Program-made: the position numbers and the translations under genes | Virus record (IMG/VR): IMGVR_UViG_3300027782_000027 | Location: 176,760 to 240,759 of that record | Length of the DNA: 64,000 nucleotides | Reading direction: 5' to 3' (one strand) | Shown here: piece after piece, positions 7,871 through 57,759 of the stretch | Position numbering within the stretch: the first letter of the stretch is position 1 | Layout of the letters: every line of letters begins with the position of its first letter | Notes under the pieces: generated by a model | What the model was told of the DNA's origin: nothing | The model's database searches: none | What the model saw: only the letters and a program-made list of their open reading frames with translations

Positions 7871-7882
7871 TAAGTATAAAAT

Positions 7883-8761: not shown

Positions 8762-8770
8762 TATAATAAT

Positions 8771-37150: not shown

Positions 37151-37770
37151 TAGTTGGATTCAATGAATATAAACACAAGTATCAATTTAATGTTACAGGT
37201 GTAATTCATGTTGGGGCTCATGTTGGTCAAGAATATAATCAATATATTGAAACATTTGGTTTAATCTCTACATATTGGTTTGAACCAATACCACATGTTT
37301 ATAAAGAACTATCAAAAAATTTAGATGGGAAACCTAACACATTTTATTATAATGTTGCGATAGGTGAAAAAATTGGTATACATAAAATGTATCTTGATGA
37401 TGGTAACGGACAACAAAGTTCATCGTTATTAAAACCAAAAGAACATCAAAATTTTTATCCCCATATCAAATTTAGTGAAGAAAACACTATTAATATTACC
37501 TTGAATACATTAGATTTTTATGGTATAGATAGTTGTAATGTTTTAGTTTTAGATACTCAGGGGTATGAGTTAAATGCTCTTAAGGGTTCAATTAATACCT
37601 TAAAGAATATTGATTATATATTCACAGAATTTAATGTTATTGAAATGTATGATGGTTGTCCATCAATTGAACAACTTGATGAGTTTTTACAACCTTTTGG
37701 TTTTTACAGACAAGAAACATGGAATGTTGATGGAGTATGGGGTGATGCATTTTACTTAAAAAAAATATGA
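37147..37770 (+). CDS. FkbM-family methyltransferase
   Basis: IHVGAHVGQE, FEP, LDTQGYELNALKG. Confidence 0.85.
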   Translation: MIVGFNEYKHKYQFNVTGVIHVGAHVGQEYNQYIETFGLISTYWFEPIPHVYKELSKNLDGKPNTFYYNVAIGEKIGIHKMYLDDGNGQQSSSLLKPKEHQNFYPHIKFSEENTINITLNTLDFYGIDSCNVLVLDTQGYELNALKGSINTLKNIDYIFTEFNVIEMYDGCPSIEQLDEFLQPFGFYRQETWNVDGVWGDAFYLKKI

Positions 37771-38354
37771 TTAAAAAAGCTTTTATCGGTAATGGGGGAC
37801 ATTTGAGAGAGGTAATCGCTCATACAAATTATGATGTTATTAGATTTGTTGAAGACGAGTATTTCAAGGGGGAATATAATACATTCCCACTATCACAATT
37901 CAATTCAAAAGAATACACGATTATGATTGCAATTGCTGATAGTCAAGTTAGGTCAAGAATTCAAAAATCATTACCTGAAGACACTAAATATTTTTCATTC
38001 ATTGACCCATCTGCAATTTTAATGGATAGAAATATTGTAATCGGTGATGGTTCATTTATTGGTGCTAATTGTGTTATAACTACTAATGTGAAGATTGGTA
38101 ATCATTCTATTTTAAATAGAAATGTAAATATTGGACATGACGTGGTAATAGGTGATTGTTTTAGTGCTATGGCTGGTTCTGTGGTATCAGGGAACGTCTC
38201 AATTGGTAATAATTGTTATATGGGTAACAATTCATCAATACGTGAAAAAACAACCATTTGTGATGATGTGGTAATTGGAATGAATGGAAGTGTTGTTAAG
38301 AATATTGATAAACCTGGAACTTATGTTGGAGTTCCTGTTAATAAAATTAAATAA
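37767..38354 (+). CDS. Sugar acetyltransferase (PglD/NeuD-like, hexapeptide repeats)
   Basis: GNGGH, IAIAD, IGHDVVIGD, YVGVP. Confidence 0.9.
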   Translation: MIKKAFIGNGGHLREVIAHTNYDVIRFVEDEYFKGEYNTFPLSQFNSKEYTIMIAIADSQVRSRIQKSLPEDTKYFSFIDPSAILMDRNIVIGDGSFIGANCVITTNVKIGNHSILNRNVNIGHDVVIGDCFSAMAGSVVSGNVSIGNNCYMGNNSSIREKTTICDDVVIGMNGSVVKNIDKPGTYVGVPVNKIK

Positions 38355-40087
38355 TGGAAAAATTACTTTCGGTTATAGTATCGGCATATAATTTTGAAAA
38401 ATACCTTGAAGAGTGTATAGATTCAATTTATAACCAAAAAATTACCTACGGATATGAGGTAATTGTTAGAGATGATTGTTCAAAAGATAATACTAAAGAT
38501 GTTTTAGTTAAATTAAAAGAAAAATACCCTGATTTAAGAGTATTAAATGGGGATGTTAATTTGGGAGCATTAGAAAATATAAGAACTTTATTAAACTCTT
38601 GCACGACAAAATATATTGCGTATATTGATGGTGATGATTATTTTGACAATTATACAATTTTAAATGAAGAGGTTGAATTTTTAGAGAATAGCCCAAATTA
38701 TAGTATGGTATGTACAGGAACAAGATATTTGTACCCTGACGGGACAAAAATACCAACAGTACCTGAGTTATTTATTAGTTCATTCCTTGATGATGTTACA
38801 ACAGATGATTTACTCACAATCAATCATGCTTCTTTCTCAAGGGTGTTTAGAAACATACCAAATTTAATAAAAAATTATTTTAAAAATTTACCTTATGTTG
38901 ATTGGCCACTTAACTACGAAATTAGTAAACATGGTTTAATTAAATGTATTCATAAATGTGGAGGCATTTATAGAATATCTAATGACGGTATGTTTTCAAA
39001 TGTATCTGAAGAGGAAAAAAACAAACAAAATTTAATTGTTATCAATGAACTTAAACGACAAAGTATTAAAGATAAGTTTAAAACAATAACCATAGTTGAT
39101 TGTTTTATACACAATCAAAATGTTTTAAATAAATTAGAATTATGTATTAATAATTTAAAAAAATATAATCACACAATACTTTTAGTATCTAATACAATTG
39201 TTCCTGAACATATAATAAAAAATGTTGATTATCATCTATATAATTCTAATAATATTCTTTTTGAGGGTGAGTATACTAATTCAGAACCAGTTATTTTTTG
39301 GAAAAATCTTGATGGATTAACAGTACATGAAGTTATAAATACAATACAGAAACATGGATTACCCGTTATGGTTAATTTATTTAATTCATTAGACTTATGT
39401 AAATCACTTGGGTTTACACACTTCCAAAGAATTGAAGTTGATGATTTGTATAGTGAGAAAGGTTATGAATATATAATAACTGTTCCTTTAATTTGTTCTG
39501 AAAAAAATAAAAAGGGAATGTTTTATTTTAATGAGGGTAGAGATGTCTCGTTCCATTATTTTTATAGTGAGATAGATTATTTCCTACAGATAATTAATAG
39601 GGTTAGTTGTGAAGAAGATTATAAAAATTATTTAGTAAATCACGGATATGGTACTGATTTTATAAATGTTGAAAAATATCTATATGATAACATAAACAGA
39701 AATGATTATGGTTTATTAATAAGGAAAAATGGTGAGGAGGAAATGAATTTTGATTTCCAGGGGACTTTATGGAATACAGAAACTACAGGTAGTAATATAT
39801 CGTCTAAATTTAGAGGATGTTCAACAAAACTTTATAATATACCGGGACAAGAGTCTACGATGTTGTTGTCTTACAACCACAACAATTTTAAATCTGAAAG
39901 AAAGATAGTTGTTAATTTTTTAGATGGTAATACTGAAACTTATTATCATAGTTTGGAAAATTATGGTCATTGGTCTTTTAATATTTTAAATAATGTTGAA
40001 AAAATATTAGTTTATGATAACCAAAACGATGAATTTTTGTATGAAATTATAAACCAAAATGTTCTTGATTATATTATTTTTTCATGA
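38354..40087 (+). CDS. GT2 glycosyltransferase with additional C-terminal domain
   Basis: SVIVSAYN, DDCSKD, YIAYIDGDDY. Confidence 0.85.
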   Translation: MEKLLSVIVSAYNFEKYLEECIDSIYNQKITYGYEVIVRDDCSKDNTKDVLVKLKEKYPDLRVLNGDVNLGALENIRTLLNSCTTKYIAYIDGDDYFDNYTILNEEVEFLENSPNYSMVCTGTRYLYPDGTKIPTVPELFISSFLDDVTTDDLLTINHASFSRVFRNIPNLIKNYFKNLPYVDWPLNYEISKHGLIKCIHKCGGIYRISNDGMFSNVSEEEKNKQNLIVINELKRQSIKDKFKTITIVDCFIHNQNVLNKLELCINNLKKYNHTILLVSNTIVPEHIIKNVDYHLYNSNNILFEGEYTNSEPVIFWKNLDGLTVHEVINTIQKHGLPVMVNLFNSLDLCKSLGFTHFQRIEVDDLYSEKGYEYIITVPLICSEKNKKGMFYFNEGRDVSFHYFYSEIDYFLQIINRVSCEEDYKNYLVNHGYGTDFINVEKYLYDNINRNDYGLLIRKNGEEEMNFDFQGTLWNTETTGSNISSKFRGCSTKLYNIPGQESTMLLSYNHNNFKSERKIVVNFLDGNTETYYHSLENYGHWSFNILNNVEKILVYDNQNDEFLYEIINQNVLDYIIFS

Positions 40088-40851
40088 TTGGATTAACAAT
40101 AACAACTTGTAAAAGAATTGATTTGTTTGAAAAAACAATACTAACATTTGTGAACGAATGTGAAGATTGTAATTTAATTGATATAATAATTCATTATGAT
40201 GATTCTTCATCTTTGGAAGATAGAGATAAGATGTTTTCATTATTGAATAGATTATTTCCCGATACTCTAATAGTCTCTAAAAGATTTAATCCAAATTCGT
40301 TTAACACTAATAGAAGACATTTAGAGATAATGAAAAAATGGAAAGAAGATATTAAATTTTTTAATATTGATTATGTTTTTCATTTAGAAGATGATTGGTT
40401 ATTTGAAAACAAATTTAGTATCCAAGAAGGTGTTGAATTGTTAAAAAATAATAATGAAATTGCTATGGTTGGATTTTCATGGAAAAAAAAGATATTCCCT
40501 AAAGAATTATTTGAACCAAGAATTATTGGTAATTTTTGGGAGTGGTATTATTCTGAAAAACATTACTTGAATGAACCTTTGTTTAATGATACGGTTGAAG
40601 AAACTTTACACGAAGTTAAGGGTTTATGGATTAAATATATTAACTGGCCTTACTTTGGATTTAGACCGGCAATTCATGATGTGAATAAATTAAATGAGAT
40701 TGAAACGTTTAATAATAATATGGATTCTTTTGAATTAGAATTTGCAATAAGATTTGCAAAAAAATTCAAATCTTTTTTACATTTAGAAAGAATTTGTTAT
40801 CATATTGGAGATGATAATTCATCATATAATTTAAATAACTCTTTAAGATAA
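40084..40851 (+). CDS. GT-A fold glycosyltransferase
   Basis: ITTCKR, YDDSS, YVFHLEDDW, YHIG. Confidence 0.75.
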   Translation: MIGLTITTCKRIDLFEKTILTFVNECEDCNLIDIIIHYDDSSSLEDRDKMFSLLNRLFPDTLIVSKRFNPNSFNTNRRHLEIMKKWKEDIKFFNIDYVFHLEDDWLFENKFSIQEGVELLKNNNEIAMVGFSWKKKIFPKELFEPRIIGNFWEWYYSEKHYLNEPLFNDTVEETLHEVKGLWIKYINWPYFGFRPAIHDVNKLNEIETFNNNMDSFELEFAIRFAKKFKSFLHLERICYHIGDDNSSYNLNNSLR

Positions 40852-41423
40852 TGGATTATAACTTTTTATGGGTTCCAAAAACTACTTATCACAGGTCAGC
40901 ACAAAGTCAATTTGTTGTTGATGTCTTTCCAAAGGTATTAAAAAACTTTGAATTAATAATTGAAATTGGTACATTCACAGGTGCCTTTACTTTATGGTTG
41001 TCTGAGAATAAATCTGATAATTGTAAAATAATTTCTTATGATATTAATCCTGATTATTGTGAAGTTAATAATCTTAAACATACTGAATTAAGAATTGGCG
41101 ACTGTTTTGATATTGATGTCATAAAAGATATTTGTGATTTAATTAAAAATTCAGGTAGAACACTTTTTTTATGTGACGGGGGGGATAAAGAACTTGAGTT
41201 TAGATTGTATTCAAAGTATCTAAAAACAAACGATGTTATTATGCTTCATGATTATTCACATAGTGAAGAGGAATATAATATTATTAAAGAAAAAATAAAT
41301 TGGCCAACAAATTCAGAATCACACTATAAAAATATTGAAAGATACTTACCTGAACTTAATTTAACTACATTTATGTATGATGATTTTAAACAAGTTTTAT
41401 GGGGTTCGTTTATAAAAAATTGA
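40851..41423 (+). CDS. SAM-dependent methyltransferase (CmcI/Methyltransf_24-like)
   Basis: IIEIGTFTG, SYDI, CDGG, MLHD. Confidence 0.75.
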   Translation: MDYNFLWVPKTTYHRSAQSQFVVDVFPKVLKNFELIIEIGTFTGAFTLWLSENKSDNCKIISYDINPDYCEVNNLKHTELRIGDCFDIDVIKDICDLIKNSGRTLFLCDGGDKELEFRLYSKYLKTNDVIMLHDYSHSEEEYNIIKEKINWPTNSESHYKNIERYLPELNLTTFMYDDFKQVLWGSFIKN

Positions 41424-41424
41424 T

Positions 41425-42144
41425 ATGAATTATAAGATTAAATTAGTTCATTTACAGACAACACAGAATGAACATAGAGAAAAACTATCACGAAAATCTA
41501 TACAACAAGTAATACCTTACGGTATTGAATATGTTTTACATCAGAACGAGTTATATACTTCCTTACCTCCAGTTCATACAAGTGTTAGACCACATAATGT
41601 TAGAATCGGTAAGTATGAAGATATTAATGACCCTGAATATGGGAACGCATTAACTCCGGCTCACTACGGATGTTTTGAGGCGTTTAAAATTGGTATCCTA
41701 TCAGAATTTGATAATGATTTGGACTTCTTAATTGTTTGTGAAGGTGATTGTATAATAGAAGTTCCGATAGAAGAATTTATTGATAAAGTTAATCATGTCT
41801 GTGGTATTGTTAATCAGGAAGATATTTCTTATTTTTCGTTTGGTGATACTAAAACTTTAGATTATGGGTGGCATCAATCTGACGTTGTTAGAGAAATACC
41901 GAACCAAGATTTATTGTTTATTACTAATAAAATAATTGGTTTACAGTGTATTATGTTTTCAAAAAAATCACGTAAAACAATTATGAGCCAGTTGAGAACA
42001 CATAGATGGGATTGTGCTGATACATTTTTTAATATAATATGTGCAGAACAGAGATTAACTATGGGTGTTTTAAAGAAAAGAATAACAACTCAGGTAGATG
42101 GGGAATCATTCATAGATAAAGAATATAAAGTTTTTACAAAATAA
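41425..42144 (+). CDS. GT25-like glycosyltransferase
   Basis: HYGCFEAF, LIVCEGDC. Confidence 0.55.
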   Translation: MNYKIKLVHLQTTQNEHREKLSRKSIQQVIPYGIEYVLHQNELYTSLPPVHTSVRPHNVRIGKYEDINDPEYGNALTPAHYGCFEAFKIGILSEFDNDLDFLIVCEGDCIIEVPIEEFIDKVNHVCGIVNQEDISYFSFGDTKTLDYGWHQSDVVREIPNQDLLFITNKIIGLQCIMFSKKSRKTIMSQLRTHRWDCADTFFNIICAEQRLTMGVLKKRITTQVDGESFIDKEYKVFTK

Positions 42145-42145
42145 T

Positions 42146-42691
42146 ATGGCACACGAACAACAGAAGAATTTTTTTAAAAGAGTTAAAGAAAAATACCCAA
42201 AATATTTCACAGATGTAAAAGTTTTAGATATCGGTTCTTTGGATATAAATGGGTCAGTAAGAGATTTATTTGATTACCCATTTTATTACGTTGGATTAGA
42301 TTTGGCACCTGGAAAAAATGTTGATGTAATTTGTCCTGGACATTTATATGATTGTGGATTTCAGTTTGATGTTGTTTCATCGGGTGAATGTTTTGAACAT
42401 GATATGTATTACGCAAGAACTATACAGAATATGGTTAAACTTCTTAAGTCTGGTGGTTTAATGGTTTTTACTTGTGCGTCAACAGGGAGACATGAACATG
42501 GTACATTAAGAACTACTCCTGATAACGCACCTTTCTTGGGTGATATTAGTGAAAAGTGGGCAAATTACTATAAGAATTTAACTGAAGATGATATTAGGTC
42601 AGTTATTGATGTTAATGATATTTTTAATAACTTTGGATTTGAATATGAACCAGTAACTTGTGATTTATATTTTTGGGGGATTAAAAAATGA
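42146..42691 (+). CDS. Class I SAM-dependent methyltransferase
   Basis: VLDIGSLDING, FDVVSSGECFEHD, LKSGG. Confidence 0.85.
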   Translation: MAHEQQKNFFKRVKEKYPKYFTDVKVLDIGSLDINGSVRDLFDYPFYYVGLDLAPGKNVDVICPGHLYDCGFQFDVVSSGECFEHDMYYARTIQNMVKLLKSGGLMVFTCASTGRHEHGTLRTTPDNAPFLGDISEKWANYYKNLTEDDIRSVIDVNDIFNNFGFEYEPVTCDLYFWGIKK

Positions 42692-43383
42692 TTGATGTTG
42701 ATGTTATTTGTCTTACTAATACAACTTCCGATGAATTATATTGGATGACAAGACGAACATTAACAACTATACACGATTCTGAAAAAGAGTATAAATTTCA
42801 TGTTCACTTAATTGAGACTAATTCCCAAAGTAATTATGATTTTTCAGATATTGTTGAAAATTATGTAAAACCAAATGAAAAATTTAATTACAATAGATTT
42901 TTAAATCATTCTTATCCTTATGTAAAACATAAATGGGTTTTAATTACTAACAATGATGTAAGATATGAAAGAGGTTGGTTTTCAAAGATAATCGAGGTTT
43001 ACAACAAAAGACCTGATGTTGAATCTTTTTCACCTAAATGTCCGATACTTTATTCAAAATATTTTTTTAATGATTTTTTAGGTGGTGATTTAGATTTTCA
43101 TGAAAGTGTTGGGACTAGTGTTCACTTAATGGGTTGGTCATTAGTTATGAAAAAAAGAGTTTTTGACATTGTTTATCCGTGGGATGAAAACTTTGATATG
43201 TACTACCAAGATAATGATTATGCTGAAATTTTATTAAAAAATAATATTAAACACGGTTTGGTTAGGGACTCAATTGCAACTCATTTAGAATCACAAACTA
43301 TAAAATATAAATTTAATTCAAATACAATTGATAATCTTAGAGTGAAAAATTATTTTTACAATAAATGGGGAAAAGAAATTTAA
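42688..43383 (+). CDS. GT2-family glycosyltransferase
   Basis: FNYNRFLN, ITNNDV, WDENFDMYYQDND. Confidence 0.8.
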   Translation: MIDVDVICLTNTTSDELYWMTRRTLTTIHDSEKEYKFHVHLIETNSQSNYDFSDIVENYVKPNEKFNYNRFLNHSYPYVKHKWVLITNNDVRYERGWFSKIIEVYNKRPDVESFSPKCPILYSKYFFNDFLGGDLDFHESVGTSVHLMGWSLVMKKRVFDIVYPWDENFDMYYQDNDYAEILLKNNIKHGLVRDSIATHLESQTIKYKFNSNTIDNLRVKNYFYNKWGKEI

Positions 43384-43384
43384 T

Positions 43385-45517
43385 ATGAAAATTACACAAG
43401 TAACACCAGGAATAATTACGATACCACCAAACGGTTGGGGGGCGGTTGAAAAGGTAATATGGGAATATTACAACAACATTAAAGAATTAGGTCACGAATG
43501 TGATATAAAGTATCTTAACGATATTGATATTAATAATAGTGATATTGTTCATATTCATATGGCTAATTTGGCAATTGATGCCGCTAATAAAGGAATACCA
43601 TATATTTTTTCATTACATGACCACCACGTTGTTTATTATGGTAAAGATTCATCTAACTACCAACAAAATTTAGATGCAATTAAAAGGTCTGTGGTATCAT
43701 TTACACATGCTGAGTTTTTAGTTGATTACTTTGATGAAACAGACAAGTTATTCTACCTATCACATGGTGTTAATACAGAGTTCTTTAAGAATGACAAACC
43801 GAAAAGAACGGAACACAAATTATTGTGTTTAGCAAACAATGGTATTGGTGGTGATTCAACACATGACAGGAAAGGATTTAGATATGCAATTGAGGCGGCA
43901 ATTAAATTAGATTTACCCATTACAGTTGCCGGTCCTGAAAACAATAGAATATTCTTTGAACATCATAATGACTTATTGAATTATGATAAGTTAACATTAA
44001 TGTTTTCAAATCCAAACGAAGAACAGATATTAGAACTATATAAAAGTCATTCTATATTCTTACACCCTTCTATGTTAGAAGCGGGACATCCGAACCTAAC
44101 ATTACTTGAGGCGGTGTCTTGTAACATGCCGGTTGTTGGTACTTACTTAGGTTCACAAACGATAGAAGGGATGGTAGTGGTTGAAAGAGATGTAAATCAA
44201 ATTGTTACTGGTATTAAACAAGTTATTGATAATTATGATTTATATCTAAGTAACACTGAATTAGATAGACAAAAATACGATTGGAGTGTTATTACCAAAA
44301 GAATGGTTAGAATCTATGAGGACCTTATTAATAGTAGAAAAAATTTGAATAGTCTTGAAACTAAACAAAGATTTGATAAAGTATTTGAAAATACTGAAAT
44401 AAAACCAAAAGATATGGTTGAAAAAATTGAAGTGATTAATCACTACATCAACGGAGCGTTAGTTGAAATTAAAGGTAATACTGATAAGAAATATTTAGTT
44501 GAGTTTTGGAATCAGAATAGTGACTGCGAATATCGTGAGGAGATTGGGTGTAATATGTGGGTTAGATTGAATAAAAAGTATTTTGATGAGTATACTTTAA
44601 AAATTTACTCTGAAGGTAATTTAATTAGTGAAAAGAAATATGATGCTGAAAATAAACGAGTATACATTGCATTAGATTCAAAATCATTGGGTGATACATT
44701 TGCTTGGGTACCATATGCCGAAGAATTCAGAAAGAAACACAACTGTAAGGTTATATGTTCAACGTTCTTTAACGATTTGTTTGTAAAACAATATCCTGAG
44801 ATACAATTTGTTTCACCTGGTAGTACGGTTCATAATCTATATGCAATGTATGAGATAGGTTGGTTCTACGATGGAGATAATGTTAAAATGGATAGACACC
44901 CAAGTGATTTCAAATTAGGTCCATTACAAAAAACCGCAACAGACATTTTAGGTTTGGAATATAAAGAAGTTAAACCTTTAATCAAAAATCCAAACAAGAT
45001 AAAGAAAAAACGAGTTGGACTGGGTATTCACTCAACGGCTCAATCAAAGTATTGGAATAATCCAAAGGGTTGGCGAGATATTACTGATTATCTAATATCT
45101 CTTGGGTATGAGGTGATTATCTATTCAAAAGAGGAAGATGGGTATATGGGTAATTTTTATCCAAAAGGCGCTAAACAAAACCCTCCTGGTTCAATCTACA
45201 AACTTATAGAAGAGTTATCAACTTGTGAATTCTTTATAGGTATATCAAGTGGTATTTCATGGGTTACTTGGGCATTGGATATCCCAACAGTTTTGATTTC
45301 AGGATTTACTGAAGAGTTTAACGAACCTTATGATAATGTATATAAGGTAAGTGCTCCTGAAAATACTTGCAGAGGATGTGCTAATAAATTTAGATTAGAC
45401 CCAGGTGATTGGAATTGGTGTCCAATAAATAAGGGGAATGATAAGATGTTTGAATGTTCTAAAAAGATAACATCTGAGATGGTAAAAGATAAAATTATTG
45501 AATTACTTGGTAAGTAA
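43385..45517 (+). CDS. GT4 fused to Aah/TibC-like autotransporter O-heptosyltransferase domain
   Basis: PPNGWGAVE, EAGHPNLTLLEA; SLGDTFAW, HSTAQSKYWNNPKGW, FIGISSGISW, ISGFT, CRGC..DWNWCP..FECSKKIT. Confidence 0.85.
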   Translation: MKITQVTPGIITIPPNGWGAVEKVIWEYYNNIKELGHECDIKYLNDIDINNSDIVHIHMANLAIDAANKGIPYIFSLHDHHVVYYGKDSSNYQQNLDAIKRSVVSFTHAEFLVDYFDETDKLFYLSHGVNTEFFKNDKPKRTEHKLLCLANNGIGGDSTHDRKGFRYAIEAAIKLDLPITVAGPENNRIFFEHHNDLLNYDKLTLMFSNPNEEQILELYKSHSIFLHPSMLEAGHPNLTLLEAVSCNMPVVGTYLGSQTIEGMVVVERDVNQIVTGIKQVIDNYDLYLSNTELDRQKYDWSVITKRMVRIYEDLINSRKNLNSLETKQRFDKVFENTEIKPKDMVEKIEVINHYINGALVEIKGNTDKKYLVEFWNQNSDCEYREEIGCNMWVRLNKKYFDEYTLKIYSEGNLISEKKYDAENKRVYIALDSKSLGDTFAWVPYAEEFRKKHNCKVICSTFFNDLFVKQYPEIQFVSPGSTVHNLYAMYEIGWFYDGDNVKMDRHPSDFKLGPLQKTATDILGLEYKEVKPLIKNPNKIKKKRVGLGIHSTAQSKYWNNPKGWRDITDYLISLGYEVIIYSKEEDGYMGNFYPKGAKQNPPGSIYKLIEELSTCEFFIGISSGISWVTWALDIPTVLISGFTEEFNEPYDNVYKVSAPENTCRGCANKFRLDPGDWNWCPINKGNDKMFECSKKITSEMVKDKIIELLGK

Positions 45518-51797: not shown

Positions 51798-52103
51798 ATG
51801 GAACAATTAACAAGTAGTCAGATACAAGAAAAGATTAACAACGGGGAAGATTTTATATTAAAGATGCATGCCACATGGTGTGGTCCCTGTAAACAATTAA
51901 CTGAAGAACTAAAGAAAATTACAACTGATGTGTCAATCTATGAGTTTGACGTTGAGAGTGATATTAATTTCTCAAAGAGTTTGGGGGTTAGAAATGTACC
52001 TGTATTAAAATTTTATAAAGAAGGTGTTGATACTCATACAATGGTTGGTTTAAAACCTGCTCAGACTGTATCATCACTAATCCTTGAACACATTAATAAC
52101 TAA
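51798..52103 (+). CDS. Thioredoxin
   Basis: ATWCGPCK, VRNVP. Confidence 0.9.
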   Translation: MEQLTSSQIQEKINNGEDFILKMHATWCGPCKQLTEELKKITTDVSIYEFDVESDINFSKSLGVRNVPVLKFYKEGVDTHTMVGLKPAQTVSSLILEHINN

Positions 52104-52375
52104 TGAGTAAGTTATTGGTAGCGTATACGATGAAAGGGTGCCATTGGTGTACAGAGTTTAAAAAACAACTTAAAGAAAACAAGATTAAGTTTAAGGAACG
52201 AGACATTGAAAAATACGAAGAGGAGTATAACCTTTTTGTAGAAGTGACTGGTAACGATTTTGTTCCGGCATTTATGATTGTTGATACTATAACAGAAGAT
52301 GCTAAGTTGTTCGCACCCGACAGAGATTTTCAGGATATCAACGAAGCTGTTGGAATTATCAAAAATATTTTGTAG
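52103..52375 (+). CDS. Glutaredoxin-like protein
   Basis: YTMKGCHWC, FVPAF. Confidence 0.85.
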   Translation: MSKLLVAYTMKGCHWCTEFKKQLKENKIKFKERDIEKYEEEYNLFVEVTGNDFVPAFMIVDTITEDAKLFAPDRDFQDINEAVGIIKNIL

Positions 52376-52377
52376 TT
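52334..52377 (+). repeat. 44-bp direct repeat, copy 1 (3' end of glutaredoxin gene)
   Basis: gatatcaacgaagctgttggaattatcaaaaatattttgtagtt. Confidence 0.9.
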
Positions 52378-52399
52378 GTGTAATTTTTTCTTATCTTTG
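52369..52399 (+). promoter_or_regulatory. Bacteroidota-type promoter of the R-M cassette
   Basis: TTTG-N19-TATCTTTG, ATG 4 nt downstream. Confidence 0.75.
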
Positions 52400-52403
52400 T
52401 GGT

Positions 52404-53030
52404 ATGGGAAAAATTAACACAATTAAAAAGAAAGATATCATACCATTTCATAATGAATTAAACACAGTTGTTGAAGAATATTGTGATAGAGCTTGGGAGT
52501 CTAATGAAGGTGGGAAGAGAAGAAAAATTATGGGAGACCTTGGAGAAGAGATATCTCAAAGAATATTTGAATATTGTATTAATATTTTAAATATTAAAAA
52601 CACGAGAGTTTATAAAGGGTGTGAGAAAAAAATTATGTGTAAAATAGATAATAACGCATATTTTCAGGCTCAAGTTGATAAGCACATTGAAATTAAAAAT
52701 AATTTAAGAATTATTTGCGAAGCTAAAACTTATTTGGATAAAACTTATGTCGAAAGAGCTAGTAGTGATTTTAGTATAATTAGAAAATATAATACGATAG
52801 GTGATAAGAAAATTTTTAGTTATATTATTTCCTTACAAGACTGTGTTAAAAAAGAAACATTATCTTTTTTTATGAGAGATGGTCATATTGATAATGTATT
52901 TATTCTTATGGATTTAAAACGAAATGGAACTAAACCAATATGGAATCCTAATTTTAGAAAAACAATTAATCTTGATAAACTTTATAATTGTATTTATATT
53001 ATAACAAATAACTTATTAGATGGAATCTAA
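52404..53030 (+). CDS. Putative PD-(D/E)XK type II restriction endonuclease
   Basis: GDLGE, QVDKH...ICEAKTYLDK; overlaps an MTase gene; true start ATG 52404. Confidence 0.6.
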   Translation: MGKINTIKKKDIIPFHNELNTVVEEYCDRAWESNEGGKRRKIMGDLGEEISQRIFEYCINILNIKNTRVYKGCEKKIMCKIDNNAYFQAQVDKHIEIKNNLRIICEAKTYLDKTYVERASSDFSIIRKYNTIGDKKIFSYIISLQDCVKKETLSFFMRDGHIDNVFILMDLKRNGTKPIWNPNFRKTINLDKLYNCIYIITNNLLDGI

Positions 53031-53787
53031 ATTAATATTAGGAGAATGTATTGAGGAAATGAAAAAATTAGAAAAAGAATCTATTGATATGATTCTTTGT
53101 GATTTACCATATGGTACAACACAGTGTAGTTGGGATAGTGTAATTCCGTTTAAAGATTTGTGGGAACAATATGAAAGAATTATAAAACCAAATGGTGCAA
53201 TTGTTTTAACTGCTGCTCAACCTTTTACCTCTAATTTGGTTATGTCTAACACCAAATTATTTAGATATTCTTTAGTTTGGGAAAAATCTAAATCCACAGG
53301 GTATTTGAATAGTAAGAAAATGCCAATGAGAGCCCATGAGGATGTGTTAGTTTTTTATAAAAAATTACCAACTTATAACCCTCAAAAGGTACAAGGGACC
53401 CCTTATGATAAAGGTATTGCTCATAGACCAACAGAAGTTTATCGAGAACAAAAAGGTGAGATACATGTTAAAAATGAAAACGGATTAAGATATCCTAGGT
53501 CGGTACAATACTTTAAAACCGCAGAATCTGAAGGTAAAGTATATCACCCAACACAAAAACCAATTTCAATGTTCGAATGGTTGATTAAAACATATTCAAA
53601 TGAGGGTGATGTGATATTAGATAATTGTTTAGGCGCTGGTACAACGGCAATTGCTGCAATAAGAACTAATCGAAAATATATTGGTATTGAGATTAGTGAA
53701 GAATATTACAATATATCACTTGAAAGATTAAATAATGAAACAAAAGACATCAACAAAGCTGTTGGAATTATCAAAAATATTTTGTAG
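53020..53787 (+). CDS. N4-C/N6-A DNA methyltransferase (beta class)
   Basis: CDLPYG, HPTQKP, VILDNCLGAGTT, YIGIE. Confidence 0.9.
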   Translation: MESKLILGECIEEMKKLEKESIDMILCDLPYGTTQCSWDSVIPFKDLWEQYERIIKPNGAIVLTAAQPFTSNLVMSNTKLFRYSLVWEKSKSTGYLNSKKMPMRAHEDVLVFYKKLPTYNPQKVQGTPYDKGIAHRPTEVYREQKGEIHVKNENGLRYPRSVQYFKTAESEGKVYHPTQKPISMFEWLIKTYSNEGDVILDNCLGAGTTAIAAIRTNRKYIGIEISEEYYNISLERLNNETKDINKAVGIIKNIL

Positions 53788-55003: not shown

Positions 55004-56116
55004 TTAGAAATAACTATTAAACTCAATATTGAGACATTTTGTAACGTCGCTGAAATCGGGGTAGTCAGGGGTTCTTCCAGAACTCAACCAACTTAAGTCA
55101 CCACTTTCAAATAAACTTTTAAGTAGGTTGATATAACCTCCGTAATAATTTAAATTTTCATATGGGTTATTTACGTTACTTTCAAACCAAAGTTTAATAT
55201 TATAATGTGCAGTTTTTGTAACTTCATATCTTACGCCATATCTTTCTGTTGATGTACTTTTATTGTAATCGTATTTTTTGTATTTATAATCTTCAGCTTT
55301 TTTATTATCAATAACCTCACCGACTAATTGTCCTATAAGTGAGTCATACAATTCGTTAACGTAAACCGACCCATAACAATTTGAGTATAATGAATATAAT
55401 TCACTTCTTATATCTAATCCTAAGTTCATTATAAAGTATTCAACGCAATCATTATCTTGTAAAAGTTTAGTGATTATCTCTTCATTTAATTTTAAATTCG
55501 ACTCATCACCTTGTTCTTTTGCTAAATCTTCTATTAATCCAGGAGTTTCATAACTGATAGATAAATTACCAATTTTAAGTAAATCTTCTTTGATGTATCC
55601 TCTAATTTCTTCTTGGTATTTTGGCTCTAGTTCTTCATAAATATCTTTGAACTCATCACCTGTTACGTCATCATAAAGATAACCATCATAATCCCCATTT
55701 AATATTTCGGCGATTCTGTCTTCACTAATATCGTTTCTACCACTACTAAAGAATTGTGCCAGTTCACCGGAATCTTGTAAATCAACATAATATTTCCCAT
55801 CAATCTCAGTTATATCTGAAAATTCCATTTCCATCATCTTATAGATGTAATTTGGGTCTTTTTGTATAAATTGATAAATTATTTTATTTTGATAATCAGA
55901 CCAATCATTATTAAAAGGGTCAATGTAATGTGATAAATTATATTTAATTATTAACTCAAAAAATTTATCAAAACTACCTATGGTGTTTTCAATATCCTCC
56001 TCAGTAACATCTCCGTTTTGGAATAGAGTAATAAGTTTTACTAACTTATTTTGGAAACCTGTTAATACGGGTTTTTCCTCTTCTTCGTTTAATTTTTTGA
56101 AAATTTTAAATTCCAT
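55004..56116 (-). CDS. Acidic late protein
   Basis: TATTTATA at 56120-56127 (minus); KKLNEEEE leader. Confidence 0.75.
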   Translation of the reverse strand: MEFKIFKKLNEEEEKPVLTGFQNKLVKLITLFQNGDVTEEDIENTIGSFDKFFELIIKYNLSHYIDPFNNDWSDYQNKIIYQFIQKDPNYIYKMMEMEFSDITEIDGKYYVDLQDSGELAQFFSSGRNDISEDRIAEILNGDYDGYLYDDVTGDEFKDIYEELEPKYQEEIRGYIKEDLLKIGNLSISYETPGLIEDLAKEQGDESNLKLNEEIITKLLQDNDCVEYFIMNLGLDIRSELYSLYSNCYGSVYVNELYDSLIGQLVGEVIDNKKAEDYKYKKYDYNKSTSTERYGVRYEVTKTAHYNIKLWFESNVNNPYENLNYYGGYINLLKSLFESGDLSWLSSGRTPDYPDFSDVTKCLNIEFNSYF

Positions 56117-56128
56117 AATTATAAATAT

Positions 56129-56154
56129 AAAAAAAGAGGAAAAATTCCCCTTTT
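56129..56154 (-). terminator. Intrinsic terminator after the micropeptide operon
   Basis: Minus strand AAAAGGGGAA-UUU-UUCCUCUUUUUU. Confidence 0.75.
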
Positions 56155-56178
56155 AGTTTTCTTATGTTGCGGGAAAGA

Positions 56179-56220
56179 TTATTTTCCACATCCGCAACCA
56201 CCACCGTTGTTGTTCTTCAT
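56179..56220 (-). CDS. 13-aa micropeptide MKNNNGGGCGCGK
   Basis: ATG..TAA between a 41-aa GCGC ORF and a terminator, with an A-rich leader. Confidence 0.5.
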   Translation of the reverse strand: MKNNNGGGCGCGK

Positions 56221-56244
56221 CGTTTTTAATTTATTAGAGGTTTA

Positions 56245-56370
56245 TTACTTTTTCTTGTTTTTGTTGTAGTACTTATCAATAGTACTCTGAACTGCGTTTT
56301 TAATACTCTCAGTTCTTAACTTTTTCACCTGTTCAGGTGAAGCATTTTGTTTTTTACATCCACATCCCAT
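56245..56370 (-). CDS. 41-aa basic peptide starting MGCGCKK
   Basis: MGCGCKKQNASPEQVKKLRTESIKNAVQSTIDKYYNKNKKK; TATTTATA at 56387-56394 (minus). Confidence 0.7.
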   Translation of the reverse strand: MGCGCKKQNASPEQVKKLRTESIKNAVQSTIDKYYNKNKKK

Positions 56371-56460
56371 ATTGTTGGTATTTTATTATAAATATTTACC
56401 ACATGTGATTTAATAGTAAATAATATAGTTATTTTAATATTTATTAATATAATTTTTATC

Positions 56461-57759
56461 ATGAGAGTTAATATAGATATATCACAAATACAAAAGGTTG
56501 TTCAGATGTTGGTTGAGGAAGAAGGACAAGAGAGTGTTGTTATAACACCTGAGCAATATATTGACTTATTAAAGTTTACTGACTATAACGGTAAATTGGT
56601 TCAAAATATGAAACAATTCAGAGGTAAAAGGATTGTTATTGATGGTAATTTAAGTCTGAGAGGAACGGATGCCAACAATATCACAAATATCACAGTTAAT
56701 GGTGGTTTAGATTTAACATATACCAAAATTAATTCTATTGAGGGGATTGAAGCCAAATCTATTTCAACATATGGTACACCATATGAACAAATTCAAATCA
56801 AAAAACAAAGACAGATTGAATTTGAAAAACAAAACGTTTTACGACAAGAGGATGAGTGGAATTTAGAAACTGCAACTAGTGAGATTGCGATTTTGGCAAA
56901 TGTTTTATTTGAATTTTTGACTTCATCTTCTGGTGATTATGAGGCTAAAGAACCTAATCATGATGCAAGGTTACAGGAACTTTATACTGCAAAAGAAAGA
57001 ATGGAGGAAATTGAGAAAGAAACAGAAGATAATGAAAATCTGATGGATTTAGAAGCGGTTGAAGAAGAAATTGAAGAACTTGAAAAAAGAATTGACTTAT
57101 ATAATTTGGTTTATGATTACAAATATTATAGTATGAGAACTTTTTATTTGTTAACTGACGAATTAGAAGAATCAAAAGAAAGATGGGCGGTTGGTGATAA
57201 TTATAGAACCCACATGTCGGCATATGAAAGAATTGATGAATTGATTGATGATATCGGAATAAAAGGTTTTAATTCAAGTTTTGTTGAAGATTATATTGAT
57301 ATTGAAGAACTTAAGGAAACTTTTAGAGACGATGAAGAAAATAATGTTAGAGAAAACCTTGAAGACTTTTTTGACGAGGAAGATTTTGAATATTCAGACC
57401 CAGCAGTTCAAGAAAGAATTGATGAAATTGAATTGTTTTTGGAAGATTCTGAAATAGACCAAGAAAAAGAAGATGAATTAAATGAAGAACTTGATGAGTT
57501 AAGAGATAGTGATAAAACTGTCCCTGAAAATTTAATTGAGGAAAAGGTTGAAGATTTAATTAATGATTTGGTTGATGACCCTGCGAACGTAATTGAAGAA
57601 TATGGTTTGAATATTGAAAACTTTATAGATATAAAAGGTTTTAAAGAAGGGTTAGTTGAAACTGACGGTATTGGTCACACACTGAACTCTTACGATGGTG
57701 ATTACGATACTATTGAATTTAATGATGAAACATATTACATTTTACAAATAGAAGGGTAA
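56461..57759 (+). CDS. Highly acidic late protein with short LRR-like N-terminal region
   Basis: GNLSLRGT/GGLDLTYTKI; D/E-rich C-terminal half; TATTTAT at 56438. Confidence 0.75.
   Translation: MRVNIDISQIQKVVQMLVEEEGQESVVITPEQYIDLLKFTDYNGKLVQNMKQFRGKRIVIDGNLSLRGTDANNITNITVNGGLDLTYTKINSIEGIEAKSISTYGTPYEQIQIKKQRQIEFEKQNVLRQEDEWNLETATSEIAILANVLFEFLTSSSGDYEAKEPNHDARLQELYTAKERMEEIEKETEDNENLMDLEAVEEEIEELEKRIDLYNLVYDYKYYSMRTFYLLTDELEESKERWAVGDNYRTHMSAYERIDELIDDIGIKGFNSSFVEDYIDIEELKETFRDDEENNVRENLEDFFDEEDFEYSDPAVQERIDEIELFLEDSEIDQEKEDELNEELDELRDSDKTVPENLIEEKVEDLINDLVDDPANVIEEYGLNIENFIDIKGFKEGLVETDGIGHTLNSYDGDYDTIEFNDETYYILQIEG

What the first reader, a model, noticed from the sequence alone, without database searches (positions are those of the whole stretch)
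56129..56394. Self-contained operon of two GCGC micropeptides
Seen (minus strand): TATTTATA promoter, a 41-aa ORF MGCGCKKQNASPEQ..., a 24-nt A-rich spacer, a 13-aa ORF MKNNNGGGCGCGK, then a terminator. Both peptides carry G-C-G-C followed by K or GK, one at the N-terminus and one at the C-terminus. Neither is in the ORF track. Inference: a shared CxC motif in adjacent tiny ORFs is unlikely by chance; they could be metal-binding or disulfide cross-linking virion peptides, or modified-peptide precursors.
Basis: partly seen in the sequence, partly recalled or inferred. Interest (0 to 1): 0.65.

Follow-up and report, generated by a model that had tools for sequence, protein, structure and literature searches.

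The report
Two conserved Cys-Gly-Cys phage micro-genes
Two tiny genes (41 and 13 codons) in an uncultured freshwater T4-type jumbo phage are real, protein-level-conserved genes that each put an exposed Cys-Gly-Cys-Lys pair of thiols at one end of the peptide, and the larger one founds a widespread, unannotated small-protein family whose chemistry (redox or metal binding) has not been tested.

Summary
On the minus strand lie a TATTTATA motif, a 41-codon ORF, a 24-nt spacer, a 13-codon ORF and a hairpin with a T-run.

- **ORF1 is a real gene.** A profile search finds 191 clusters at 50% identity, all proteins of 40-100 aa. Of the top 150, 149 carry M-[G/S/A]-(G)-C-[G/S]-C-K at the N-terminus. 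They have exactly two cysteines, a variable Q/N/P linker and a conserved basic helix (..KKT[V/I]EKYYNKK). Third codon positions vary while first and second do not (pN/pS 0.20).
- **ORF2 is very probably a real gene.** It is 11-23 aa and always ends GGCGCGK-stop. It is kept in several sublineages, has its own promoter-like motif and terminator elsewhere, and lies about 45 kb from ORF1 in a complete 322-kb genome. Another complete genome lacks it.
- **The host virus is a phage.** It has a T4-type gp23 capsid protein, so eukaryote-style acylation of MGCGC is excluded.
- **The promoter motif looks late-type.** It also precedes the terminase, portal, protease and sheath genes.
- **No known family matches.** Pfam, PHROGs, NCBIfam, Rfam, GenBank phages and the literature give nothing.
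- **Function is inferred only.** I propose a terminal dithiol "head", either redox-active CXC or thiolate metal site.

The parts
56387..56394 (-). TATTTATA promoter-like motif, 16 nt upstream of the ORF1 start codon
   Evidence: The sequence is. The core TATTTAT lies within 80 nt upstream of 84 of 262 genes of the genome, against 37 for its reverse complement. These genes include terminase, portal, head protease, tail sheath and adaptor. The region is 98.9% identical to L027, where the flanking CDSs are 86-90% identical.
56245..56370 (-). ORF1, a 41-aa micro-protein. It has an N-terminal M-G-C-G-C-K, a short linker and a basic amphipathic helix at residues 12-35.
   Evidence: It is listed. Near-clade pN/pS is 0.197 and variable sites by codon position are 4/4/14. 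Family-wide entropy is about 0 at codon positions 1 and 2 and 0.9-1.5 bits at position 3 in the conserved blocks. There are 191 clusters at E<=1e-3, and the motif is kept in 149 of the top 150. AlphaFold2 gives coil for residues 1-11 and a helix for 12-35.
56221..56244 (-). 24-nt A-rich spacer between ORF1 and ORF2. Together with the ORF1 stop codon it reads GTAATAAACC.
   Evidence: GTAATAAACC is the conserved start of the ORF2 leader in phages where ORF2 has its own TATTTATA motif.
56179..56220 (-). ORF2, a 13-aa micro-peptide: M-K, then an Asn/Gly spacer, then G-G-G-C-G-C-G-K and stop
   Evidence: It appears. Versions of 11, 12, 13, 16, 17 and 23 aa are conserved, all in frame, with only third-position changes in the GGCGCGK block. 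It is a stand-alone unit in G002 and G005, about 45 kb from ORF1.
56125..56154 (-). Intrinsic-terminator-like hairpin (AAAAGGGGAA/TTCCTCTTTT) plus T-run, closing the two-gene unit
   Evidence: It was found by the terminator scan and appears in the fold. It is conserved, with stem changes that keep pairing (GGGGA/TCCCC, GGGGG/CCCCC, GGGAG/CTCCC), in related loci.
56120..56127 (-). Second TATTTATA motif, 3 nt before the ATG of the next gene (370 aa)
   Evidence: It belongs to the short-spacing class (4-8 nt from the TATTTAT core to the ATG), which holds 36 genes in the genome.
55004..56116 (-). Conserved downstream neighbour: an acidic 370-aa protein of unknown function ('cluster 1')
   Evidence: It lies downstream of ORF1 on the same strand in 50 of the 61 loci compared. 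It has no Pfam, PHROG or NCBIfam hit, no conserved Cys and pI 4.3.
56461..57759 (+). Conserved divergent neighbour: a very acidic 432-aa protein of unknown function ('cluster 0'). Its own TATTTAT lies at 56438-56444 (+).
   Evidence: It is present in 60 of 61 loci. It has no family hits, pI 4.07 with 115 D+E and no conserved Cys.

Best explanation
These are two genuine small genes of an uncultured T4-type jumbo phage. The record is about 241 kb and estimated 82% complete.

**ORF1** belongs to a widespread, unnamed small-protein family with three parts.
- The N-terminus is (M)-[G/S/A]-Cys-Gly-Cys-Lys. The small second residue predicts removal of the initiator Met, which would place the two thiols 1-2 residues from a free amine.
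- A disordered Q/N/P-rich linker of variable length follows.
- A conserved basic amphipathic helix (..KKT[V/I]EKYYNKK) ends the protein.

**ORF2** is a lineage-restricted companion that is little more than the same head at the other end: Met-Lys, a Gly/Asn spacer, then Gly-Gly-Cys-Gly-Cys-Gly-Lys-COOH.

**Transcription.** Both are transcribed from a TATTTATA-type phage promoter, the type that also precedes the morphogenesis genes. In this window they form one bicistronic unit closed by one terminator.

**Inferred mechanism.** The exposed terminal Cys-Gly-Cys-(Gly)-Lys is a reactive dithiol head.
- It could cycle between dithiol and an 11-membered disulfide ring, giving CXC thiol-disulfide exchange. 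The flanking Lys would favour the thiolate, as in the CGPCK and CGHCK sites of thioredoxin and PDI.
- Or it could chelate a thiophilic metal with the thiolates plus the terminal or backbone nitrogens, as the CxxCGC N-terminus of HypB does.
- The ORF1 helix would tether the head to a partner or structure. ORF2 would be a free, diffusible head.

**Shown:** the anatomy, coding selection, distribution, synteny and promoter class.
**Inferred:** Met removal, late timing and any thiol chemistry.
For: **Coding selection on ORF1.**
- Near-clade pN/pS is 0.197, with variable sites of 4/4/14 by codon position.
- Family-wide, only third positions vary in the conserved blocks.

**Family.**
- The profile search of 1.84e9 representatives finds 191 clusters at E<=1e-3 and 91 at E<=1e-10, all proteins of 40-100 aa.
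- 149 of the top 150 carry the motif. These have exactly 2 Cys, and Lys follows the second Cys in all of them. Residue 2 is G, S or A throughout, and median pI is 9.6.
- AlphaFold2 gives coil for residues 1-11 and a helix for 12-35.

**ORF2.**
- It is kept with in-frame length variants and synonymous changes (TGC/TGT, GGA/GGT, AAA/AAG).
- It has its own motif, leader and terminator, and is unlinked from ORF1, in G002 and G005.
- The pattern GGCGCGK-stop occurs in 107 IMG/VR stretches, against 2 for a mirror-order control.

**Virus type and promoter.**
- The virus is a phage: Gp23 capsid at E 6e-65, a terminase and no NCLDV capsid.
- The motif precedes the terminase, portal, protease, sheath and adaptor genes.

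**Context.** A phage thioredoxin (WCGPCK) and a glutaredoxin (CHWC) lie in conserved synteny about 4 kb away.

**Chemical precedents.**
- H-Cys-Gly-Cys-NH2 has E0' of -0.167 V, and designed 24-residue CXC-alpha-helix-HDEL peptides (CRC and CWC) replace PDI in yeast (bioRxiv 10.64898/2026.01.27.701630).
- The disordered CxxCGC N-terminus of HypB binds Ni(II) at picomolar affinity through the N-terminal amine and thiolates (PMC12284835).

**Transcription hint.** A 213-nt contig from a freshwater-sediment metatranscriptome covers 56138-56349 with 3 mismatches.
Against: - No direct evidence of translation exists. The RNA-library contig could come from contaminating DNA.
- The whole intergenic block, non-coding parts included, is more conserved (93-99%) than the flanking genes in close relatives. 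Near-clade conservation alone is therefore not diagnostic.
- The evidence for ORF2 rests on few independent lineages. Its Gly/Asn codon repeats would slip in 3-nt units whether or not they are coding.
- Part of the ORF2 set was collected with a pattern that fixes the amino acids.
- No conserved Cys or His partner exists in the four syntenic neighbours.
- The ORF1 homodimer + Zn fold gave no verdict.
- A complete 321-kb relative has ORF1 but no GGCGC peptide at all. ORF2 is therefore dispensable, and the two need not act together.
- Thioredoxin and glutaredoxin genes are common in T4-type phages for ribonucleotide reduction, so their proximity may mean nothing.
- Two cysteines alone cannot fill a tetrahedral Cys4 site.
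Confidence: 0.5

Rival explanations
1. Structural cross-linker, the first reader's 'virion peptide'. ORF1 would be a late, very basic peptide that binds DNA or an acidic virion or scaffold protein through its helix. Its terminal CGC would lock it to neighbours by intermolecular disulfides or a shared metal, as protamines do. ORF2 would cap or extend such links.
For: - The promoter motif is of the late type.
- Median pI is 9.6 and median net charge is +5.
- Both conserved flanking proteins are strongly acidic, with pI 4.1 and 4.3.
- Other small basic viral proteins end in GG(G)CGCGK.
Against: - No virion data exist.
- The locus lies about 160 kb from the capsid module.
- The neighbours have no conserved Cys.
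- The bacterial cytoplasm is reducing.
- The dimer fold gave no verdict.
Confidence: 0.15
2. ORF2 is not a functional peptide. It would be a regulatory leader or upstream ORF, or the G-rich core of a small RNA, that senses translation or pairs with RNA and modulates read-through of the terminator into the next gene.
For: - ORF2 is a 13-codon ORF followed within about 25 nt by a terminator and then a gene.
- In almost every variant, the G-rich Gly/Cys codons can pair with the pyrimidine-rich start of the 3'UTR, leaving the stop codon in the loop.
- One compensatory pair exists: UGC..CGC in L179 against UGU..CAC in L207.
- The promoter and leader are at least as conserved as the ORF.
Against: - The hairpin is no more stable than with a shuffled 3'UTR (median z -0.7).
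- RNAalifold finds no shared structure, and Rfam finds nothing.
- The window-clade hairpin GUUGCGG/CCGCAAC is absent in other clades.
- The downstream gene differs where ORF2 is unlinked.
- The downstream gene has its own promoter motif after the terminator.
- The peptide end is identical to the motif of ORF1 and to the C-termini of unrelated viral proteins.
Confidence: 0.15
3. Precursors of ribosomally made, post-translationally modified peptides (RiPPs). The Cys pair would be converted (thioamide, thiazole or oxazolone, thioether) by a phage or host enzyme into a chelator or toxin.
For: - The peptides are short with invariant Cys.
- Both ends of ORF1 are conserved around a variable middle.
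- Several neighbours have unknown function.
Against: - No radical-SAM, YcaO, LanB/C/M, MNIO/DUF692 or peptidase family was found within about 5 kb.
- ORF2, at 11 aa, has no room for a leader.
- ORF2 moves around the genome without a fixed companion gene.
Confidence: 0.07
4. Dual-acylation membrane anchor. MGCGC would be an N-myristoylation and S-palmitoylation signal like that of Lck (from my own knowledge), so the virus would infect a eukaryote.
For: - The string MGCGC followed by basic residues fits the general shape of such signals.
- Some C-terminal CGCGK proteins lie on contigs labelled as giant-virus MAGs.
Against: - The virus has a T4-type Gp23 capsid and a terminase and lacks an NCLDV capsid.
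- Its terminators are of the bacterial type.
- Its closest cultured relatives infect Flavobacterium, Microcystis and Rhodothermus.
- Residue 2 is Ser or Ala in 22 of 142 representatives, and 7 more have an extra residue before the first Cys.
- Position 6 is always Lys, not Ser or Thr.
Confidence: 0.02
5. Chance ORFs in a conserved non-coding regulatory region.
For: The entire intergenic block is highly conserved in close relatives.
Against: - Substitutions follow the third-codon-position pattern.
- There are 191 protein clusters.
- The motif is kept while the linker is unalignable.
- The pattern occurs 107 times against 2 for the control.
Confidence: 0.02

Closest known systems
N-terminal CxxCGC nickel site of the hydrogenase metallochaperone HypB (PMC12284835)
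   Same: Both have a disordered N-terminal stretch with Cys-Gly-Cys next to a free terminal amine. In HypB the metal is bound by the amine nitrogen plus thiolates.
   Different: HypB uses three Cys (2, 5, 7) and carries a GTPase domain. ORF1 has two Cys, no domain, and is a phage protein of 40-62 aa. No hydrogenase genes were seen here.
CXC thiol-disulfide catalysts: the Cys-Gly-Cys tripeptide and designed CXC-linker-HDEL peptides that replace PDI in yeast (bioRxiv 10.64898/2026.01.27.701630)
   Same: The architecture matches: an N-terminal CXC, then a linker or alpha-helix, then a short charged tail. The size is similar (12-24 aa designed, 11-62 aa here). A positive charge sits near the thiols.
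   Different: The designed peptides are synthetic, act in the oxidising ER, and work best with Trp or Arg as X. The phage peptides are natural, have Gly (rarely Ser) as X, and would act in a bacterial cytoplasm. No activity has been measured.
Thioredoxin/PDI active site C-G-[P/H]-C-K (the phage's own thioredoxin at window 51798-52103 reads WCGPCK)
   Same: Both have a Cys pair starting C-G, and Lys immediately after the second Cys is invariant. The abstract of PMC5835755 reports a functional role for the Lys residues flanking the CxxC sites of PDI.
   Different: One residue fewer separates the cysteines (CXC, not CXXC). There is no thioredoxin fold.
C-terminal cysteine 'swinging arms' (from my own knowledge): SoxY ...GGCGG-COOH, thioredoxin reductase ...GCUG-COOH, Plasmodium TrxR ...CGGGKCG-COOH
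   Same: Both have a Gly-rich, flexible extreme C-terminus carrying one or two reactive Cys, as in ORF2 and the other ...GG(G)CGCGK-COOH viral proteins.
   Different: In the known cases the arm is attached to a large enzyme or carrier domain. ORF2 is the arm alone.
Leader peptides of transcription attenuators (trpL, hisL type; from my own knowledge)
   Same: Both are 11-23-codon ORFs with a run of identical codons, followed by a terminator and a gene.
   Different: No conserved alternative hairpins were found. ORF2 has its own promoter and terminator, the downstream gene changes between genomes, and the peptide end is conserved as amino acids.

Membership tests
xCGCK...EKYY micro-protein family (unnamed; defined here) | N-terminus M-[G/S/A]-(G)-C-[G/S]-C-K with exactly two Cys in the protein | tested here: met
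   ORF1 starts MGCGCK and has two Cys. 149 of the top 150 profile hits share the feature.
xCGCK...EKYY micro-protein family (unnamed; defined here) | C-terminal basic amphipathic helix ending [E/D/Q]-K-Y-Y, after a variable linker; total length 40-62 aa | tested here: met
   ORF1 ends ..TIDKYYNKNKKK and is 41 aa long. The helix spans residues 12-35 in the AlphaFold2 model.
xCGCK...EKYY micro-protein family (unnamed; defined here) | Position between the divergent acidic 'cluster 0' gene and the 'cluster 1' or 'cluster 4' genes | tested here: met
   Cluster 0 is present in 60 of 61 loci and cluster 1 in 50 of 61. The window has both.
HypB-type N-terminal high-affinity Ni site | Three cysteines in CxxCGC at positions 2, 5 and 7 | tested here: not met
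   Only two Cys are present (positions 3 and 5), and no family member has a third.
HypB-type N-terminal high-affinity Ni site | Attached HypB GTPase domain | tested here: not met
   The protein is 41 aa with no Pfam or NCBIfam hit.
Thioredoxin-fold oxidoreductases | Thioredoxin fold with a CxxC active site | tested here: not met
   The spacing is CXC. The model is a coil plus a single helix, and there is no Pfam hit.
Src-family-type dual acylation signal (N-myristoyl Gly2 plus S-palmitoyl Cys) | Invariant Gly2, small or hydroxyl residue at position 6, and a eukaryotic host supplying N-myristoyltransferase | tested here: not met
   Residue 2 is Ser or Ala in 22 of 142, and position 6 is always Lys. 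The virus has a T4-type capsid and terminase and no NCLDV capsid.
Attenuator leader peptide (for ORF2) | Conserved mutually exclusive antiterminator and terminator hairpins coupled to the ORF, and a fixed regulated downstream gene | tested here: not met
   No consensus structure was found. The hairpin is not better than shuffles. The downstream gene differs in G002, and ORF2 has its own promoter motif and terminator.
RiPP precursor peptide | A modifying enzyme of a known maturase family encoded next to the precursor | tested here: inconclusive
   No known maturase family was found within about 5 kb. However, four conserved neighbours have no recognisable family.
Metallothionein / phytochelatin-like thiolate cluster peptides | Many Cys (usually 7 or more) in repeated CxC/CxxC motifs forming metal-thiolate clusters | tested here: not met
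   Each peptide has exactly two Cys.
T4-type late gene | Late promoter TATAAATA read by a gp55-type sigma (from my own knowledge of T4) | tested here: inconclusive
   The motif here is TATTTATA in the sense orientation, not TATAAATA. It does precede the terminase, portal, protease and sheath genes. No motif lies within 140 nt of the capsid gene. No transcription start data exist.

The most novel reading that the evidence does not exclude
These would be natural, genetically encoded minimal dithiol cofactors. The phage would make 11-60-residue peptides whose only working part is a terminal Cys-Gly-Cys-Lys. They would serve as diffusible (ORF2) or tethered (ORF1) thiol-disulfide catalysts or metal shuttles, possibly fed by the phage's own thioredoxin and glutaredoxin. 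The same ...GG(G)CGCGK-COOH module would be reused as a C-terminal tag on unrelated small basic proteins of other large DNA viruses, including contigs labelled as giant-virus MAGs. That would be a natural counterpart of the designed CXC peptides that can replace PDI.
Probability: 0.15. Interest if true: 0.85.

Novelty: new variant of a known kind. Interest (0 to 1): 0.6.

Why it matters
- **Missed by annotation.** Genes of 11-60 codons are routinely missed in phage annotation, and neither ORF was in the ORF track.
- **Well supported by comparison.** ORF1 has 191 clusters. ORF2 is an 11-codon gene with its own promoter-like motif and terminator. A simple, chemically suggestive shared motif sits at opposite termini.
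- **Cheap to test.** The peptides can be made synthetically and assayed for metal binding, reduction potential, thiol pKa and disulfide isomerase activity.
- **Possible payoff.** If the dithiol head is catalytic or metal-carrying, this would be a natural example of enzyme-like chemistry by a peptide with almost no fold. It would also show a new way for large phages to manipulate thiol or metal homeostasis during late infection.
- **A reusable marker.** The find gives a marker motif for locating similar genes in other viruses.

Tried and rejected
- **Family and structure libraries.**
  - Rfam on the whole window found no family, and no tRNAs were found.
  - Pfam, PHROGs and NCBIfam found nothing for ORF1 or for the four conserved neighbours.
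  - The ESM Atlas look-up for the 210-aa neighbour returned only unnamed clusters.
- **Sequence searches.**
  - The word-based protein search with ORF1 found only close relatives. The profile search was needed to reach the rest.
  - tblastn of two family members against 50,697 GenBank phage records found no match at E<=1. BLAST's low-complexity filter is on and could hide weak hits.
- **Literature.** Searches for MGCGCK and for Cys-Gly-Cys with bacteriophage found nothing relevant.
- **Complex prediction.** The ORF1 x2 + Zn job gave 'no answer' (score 0.02, mark 0.42). I do not use it as evidence either way. I did not send neighbour pairs, because adjacency alone is not sufficient reason.
- **RNA structure.**
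  - The hairpin GUUGCGG/CCGCAAC overlapping the ORF2 Cys codons is specific to the window clade.
  - RNAalifold on 41 variants gave no consensus.
  - The stop-in-loop hairpins are not better than shuffled 3'UTRs.
- **Neighbours as partners.** I looked for a conserved Cys or His partner in the neighbours and found none.
- **Eukaryotic-virus reading.** The MGCGC-as-acylation reading is rejected by the capsid type and the Gly2 replacements.
- **Metatranscriptomes.** Only assembled contigs were available, so no transcript ends or strand could be read.
Full report
**1. Observation.**
- TATTTATA lies at 56387-56394.
- ORF1 is a 41-codon ORF at 56245-56370, starting MGCGCKKQ.
- A 24-nt A-rich spacer follows.
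- ORF2 is a 13-codon ORF at 56179-56220, reading MKNNNGGGCGCGK.
- A 10-pair hairpin with a T-run lies at 56132-56154.
- A second TATTTATA lies 3 nt before the ATG of the next gene (370 aa, 55004-56116).
- A 432-aa gene is transcribed divergently from 56461, with its own TATTTAT at 56438-56444.

The six-frame translation of the whole genome contains only three GCGC tetrapeptides in 481,514 codons, and two are these ORFs. No other credible small ORF carries CGC.

**2. What the genome is.**
- The window is bases 176,760-240,759 of a 240,759-bp IMG/VR virus record estimated 82% complete.
- It encodes a T4-type major capsid protein (Pfam Gp23, E 6e-65) and a large terminase.
- It also encodes a portal, head protease, tail sheath and adaptor. 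It has no NCLDV capsid.
- The nearest cultured relatives by capsid protein are Flavobacterium phage vB_FspM_immuto (42% identity), Microcystis phage Mel-JY01 and Rhodothermus phage RM378.
- A DUF3310 gene is 77% identical in DNA to the Flavobacterium phage.
- It is therefore a distant T4-type jumbo phage of a bacterium, probably from fresh water. The only RNA libraries holding related sequence are a lake-water and a freshwater-sediment metatranscriptome.

**3. ORF1 is a real gene and founds a family.**
- Using the flanking proteins I fetched 92 related IMG/VR loci. Both micro-ORFs are intact in every near relative whose sequence reaches them.
- Within the near clade there are 13 distinct ORF1 coding sequences. 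They show 4, 4 and 14 variable sites at codon positions 1, 2 and 3, and pN/pS is 0.197.
- In relatives whose 432-aa neighbour is only 29-51% identical, ORF1 keeps M-[G/S]-C-G-C-K-N and a C-terminal ..NAVKxTIEK[F/Y]Y. The middle becomes unalignable.
- A pattern and tblastn scan with an alignment found 80 further loci on contigs up to 321 kb.
- A profile search of 1.84 billion representatives found 191 clusters at E<=1e-3 and 91 at E<=1e-10. All are proteins of 40-100 aa, never a domain of something larger.
- That search does not impose the motif, and it gives the unbiased picture of the top 150.
  - 142 start M-[G/S/A]-C-[G/S]-C-K and 7 start M-[S/G/A]-G-C-G-C-K.
  - Apart from one outlier that lacks the motif, every member has exactly two Cys, and Lys after the second Cys is invariant.
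  - The longer entries are upstream miscalls of the start.
- Across 58 distinct coding sequences, the conserved blocks have near-zero entropy at codon positions 1 and 2 and 0.9-1.5 bits at position 3. The regex used in that step fixed C3, C5 and K6.
- AlphaFold2 with a 30-row alignment predicts a coil for residues 1-11 and one helix for residues 12-35, with mean pLDDT 74.
- The family is basic, with median pI 9.6 and median net charge +5.
- Residue 2 is always Gly, Ser or Ala. By the known specificity of methionine aminopeptidase this predicts removal of Met. That is an inference.

**4. ORF2 is very probably a gene too, but a lineage-restricted one.**
- It occurs as versions of 11, 12, 13, 16, 17 and 23 aa (for example MKKGGGCGCGK, MKNGGGCGCGK, MKGGGGCGCGK). 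All keep the ATG, the frame and GG-C-G-C-G-K-stop.
- The differences in the conserved block are all at third codon positions: TGC/TGT, GGA/GGT and AAA/AAG.
- In the window clade it shares ORF1's promoter motif and terminator.
- In the L084, L092 and L169 clades a TATTTATA motif followed by the conserved leader GTAATAAAC sits directly after the ORF1 stop. In L089, L166 and L190 ORF2 also has its own terminator.
- In the complete 322-kb genome G002, and in G005, ORF2 is a stand-alone unit (motif, 31-nt leader, 11 codons, terminator) about 45 kb from ORF1 and between unrelated genes.
- The complete 321-kb genome G001 has ORF1 but no GGCGC peptide anywhere.
- Three caveats apply. Few lineages are independent. 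The Gly/Asn codon repeats would slip in 3-nt units regardless of coding. Part of the set was collected with a pattern that fixes the amino acids.

**5. The C-terminal tag elsewhere.**
- The DNA pattern for GG-C-G-C-G-K-stop hits 107 stretches of IMG/VR. A mirror-order control with the same codons (M-K-G-C-G-C-G-G) hits 2.
- Beyond ORF2, the tag ends other small, mostly basic proteins.
  - 60-75-aa proteins on contigs labelled GVMAG (L184, L191, L216, L221, L234).
  - A 54-aa protein in a complete 110-kb phage record with terminal repeats (L204).
  - 48-aa and 22-aa proteins (L237/L254 and L193).
  - A 192-aa Cys/Ala/Pro-rich protein (L242).
  - A 106-aa family whose sequence shows two long hydrophobic stretches (L188 and others).
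- Homologues of the 106-aa family always end in a Cys pair close to Lys, but with varying spacing: CGCGK, GCMGCK, TCCGK, CKSC. There the general feature is a C-terminal Cys pair, not the exact string.
- I could not check what viruses the GVMAG contigs are, because those records are not held.

**6. Context.**
- Gene order is conserved over wide divergence. It runs: 253-aa protein, acidic 432-aa protein, divergent promoters, ORF1, (ORF2), acidic 370-aa protein, 210-aa protein. Further on lie a glutaredoxin (52103-52375, CHWC) and a thioredoxin (51798-52103, WCGPCK).
- None of the four immediate neighbours has a recognisable family or a conserved Cys.
- The motif TATTTAT lies within 80 nt upstream of 84 of 262 genes, against 37 for its reverse complement. 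Its distance to the ATG is bimodal, at 4-8 nt or 12-18 nt.
- It precedes the terminase, portal, protease, sheath and adaptor genes. I take it as a late-type phage promoter, which is an inference. It is not T4's TATAAATA, and none lies within 140 nt of the capsid gene.
- A 213-nt contig from a metatranscriptome covers 56138-56349 with 3 mismatches, while neighbouring contigs differ by about 5-10%. This is compatible with transcription but does not prove it.

**7. How it most likely works.**
- What selection preserves is a Cys-Gly-Cys followed by (Gly-)Lys at an exposed, flexible terminus. In ORF1 it also preserves a basic amphipathic helix at the far end of a spacer of free length and sequence. 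That is the anatomy of a reactive head on a tether.
- Two chemistries have direct precedents.
  - **CXC thiol-disulfide exchange.** H-Cys-Gly-Cys-NH2 has a reduction potential of -0.167 V, close to PDI. A nearby ammonium lowers the thiol pKa. Designed 24-residue CXC-alpha-helix-HDEL peptides (CRC and CWC) rescue yeast lacking PDI. The invariant Lys after the second Cys mirrors CGPCK and CGHCK of thioredoxin and PDI.
  - **Thiolate metal binding.** The disordered CxxCGC N-terminus of HypB binds Ni(II) at picomolar affinity through the terminal amine and thiolates.
- I cannot decide between these two. Neither was tested, and neither a partner nor a target is known.
- I put 0.85-0.9 on ORF1 being a translated, functional protein and about 0.75 on ORF2 being a functional peptide. 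I put about 0.5 on the dithiol-head mechanism as stated.

**8. Rivals.**
- ORF2 as a leader peptide or small RNA is weakened on several counts.
  - There is no conserved alternative structure.
  - ORF2 has its own promoter and terminator.
  - The downstream gene changes between genomes.
  - The peptide end is identical to ORF1's motif.
- A RiPP role lacks any known maturase nearby, but the unknown neighbours keep it open.
- A protamine-like virion cross-linker fits the charge and the promoter class, but no data bear on it.
- Eukaryote-style acylation of MGCGC is excluded.

**9. Novelty.**
- No library, GenBank phage record or paper describes these peptides.
- Terminal Cys arms are known as parts of larger proteins. 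Free-standing genes that encode little else, one of them only 11-23 codons with its own promoter and terminator, are a new variant.
- Function remains to be shown, so I score interest at 0.6.

Noticed in passing
window 3-6326 (+), and 6974-9649 (+): An open-ended ORF of more than 2,100 aa is almost entirely collagen-like G-X-Y repeats, rich in Ser and Thr (Pfam Collagen, E 3e-244). It explains the GC of 0.45-0.48, the strong GC skew and the many overlapping ORFs in the first 6 kb. Three paralogous genes of about 292-298 aa with a Gly_rich_2 domain follow it.
   Followed up: partly
whole genome G000; in the window e.g. 56387-56394 (-), 56120-56127 (-), 56438-56444 (+): A genome-wide promoter-like motif (A)TATTTAT(A) lies upstream of 84 of 262 genes, against 37 for the reverse complement. 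It often sits directly after a terminator. Its spacing to the ATG is bimodal, at 4-8 nt or 12-18 nt. The short class implies leaderless or nearly leaderless mRNAs. It precedes the terminase, portal, protease and sheath genes but not the capsid gene.
   Followed up: partly
L184, L191, L216, L221, L234, L204, L237/L254, L193, L242, L188 family (IMG/VR loci): The C-terminal string GG(G)CGCGK-stop also ends unrelated small, mostly basic proteins of other viral contigs. Some are labelled giant-virus MAGs, and one is in a complete 110-kb phage record. The pattern has 107 hits, against 2 for a mirror control. In the 106-aa family with two hydrophobic stretches, the homologues end in varied Cys pairs next to Lys.
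   Followed up: partly
window 51798-52103 (+) and 52103-52375 (+): Adjacent thioredoxin (WCGPCK) and glutaredoxin (CHWC) genes lie in conserved synteny with the micro-gene module across distant relatives. In the window they are separated from it by two inserted genes: a DNA methyltransferase (53020-53787) and an unannotated 243-aa gene (52299-53030), plus a 175-aa gene.
   Followed up: partly
window 34550-45517 (+): A run of large multi-domain sugar-modifying enzymes. One is an 866-aa fusion of a GT1 glycosyltransferase, an FkbM methyltransferase and a DegT-type aminotransferase. Others are a 577-aa GT2 and a 710-aa GT1 plus GT9. This suggests the phage builds or alters a glycan.
   Followed up: no
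L022, L023, L032 (IMG/VR) versus window 55004-56116 (-): The downstream 370-aa gene carries an extra N-terminal domain of about 100 aa in some strains. In those strains the neighbouring 432-aa protein is 93-98% identical to the window's. The same extension is present in the L084, L092, L089 and L169 clades. This looks like recent domain gain or loss.
   Followed up: no
L179 vs L207 (ORF2 3' end); window 56160-56200 (-): In nearly all ORF2 variants the last Gly-Cys-Gly-Lys codons can pair with the first bases of the 3'UTR, leaving the stop codon in the loop. One compensatory pair was seen (UGC..CGC against UGU..CAC). The folds are not more stable than with shuffled 3'UTRs.
   Followed up: yes
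L018, L103, L214 (IMG/VR): One strain has changes upstream of ORF2 that create a second in-frame ATG. This gives a possible 16-aa form, MKKMKNNNGGGCGCGK.
   Followed up: no
window 14987-17437 (-) and 9978-12062 (+): An 816-aa protein on the opposite strand has a lactonase/YncE-type beta-propeller. A 694-aa protein has a sub-threshold match (24.2 bits, cut-off 28) to an SprB repeat, a repeat I know from Bacteroidota gliding adhesins. Both are possible host-range hints.
   Followed up: no
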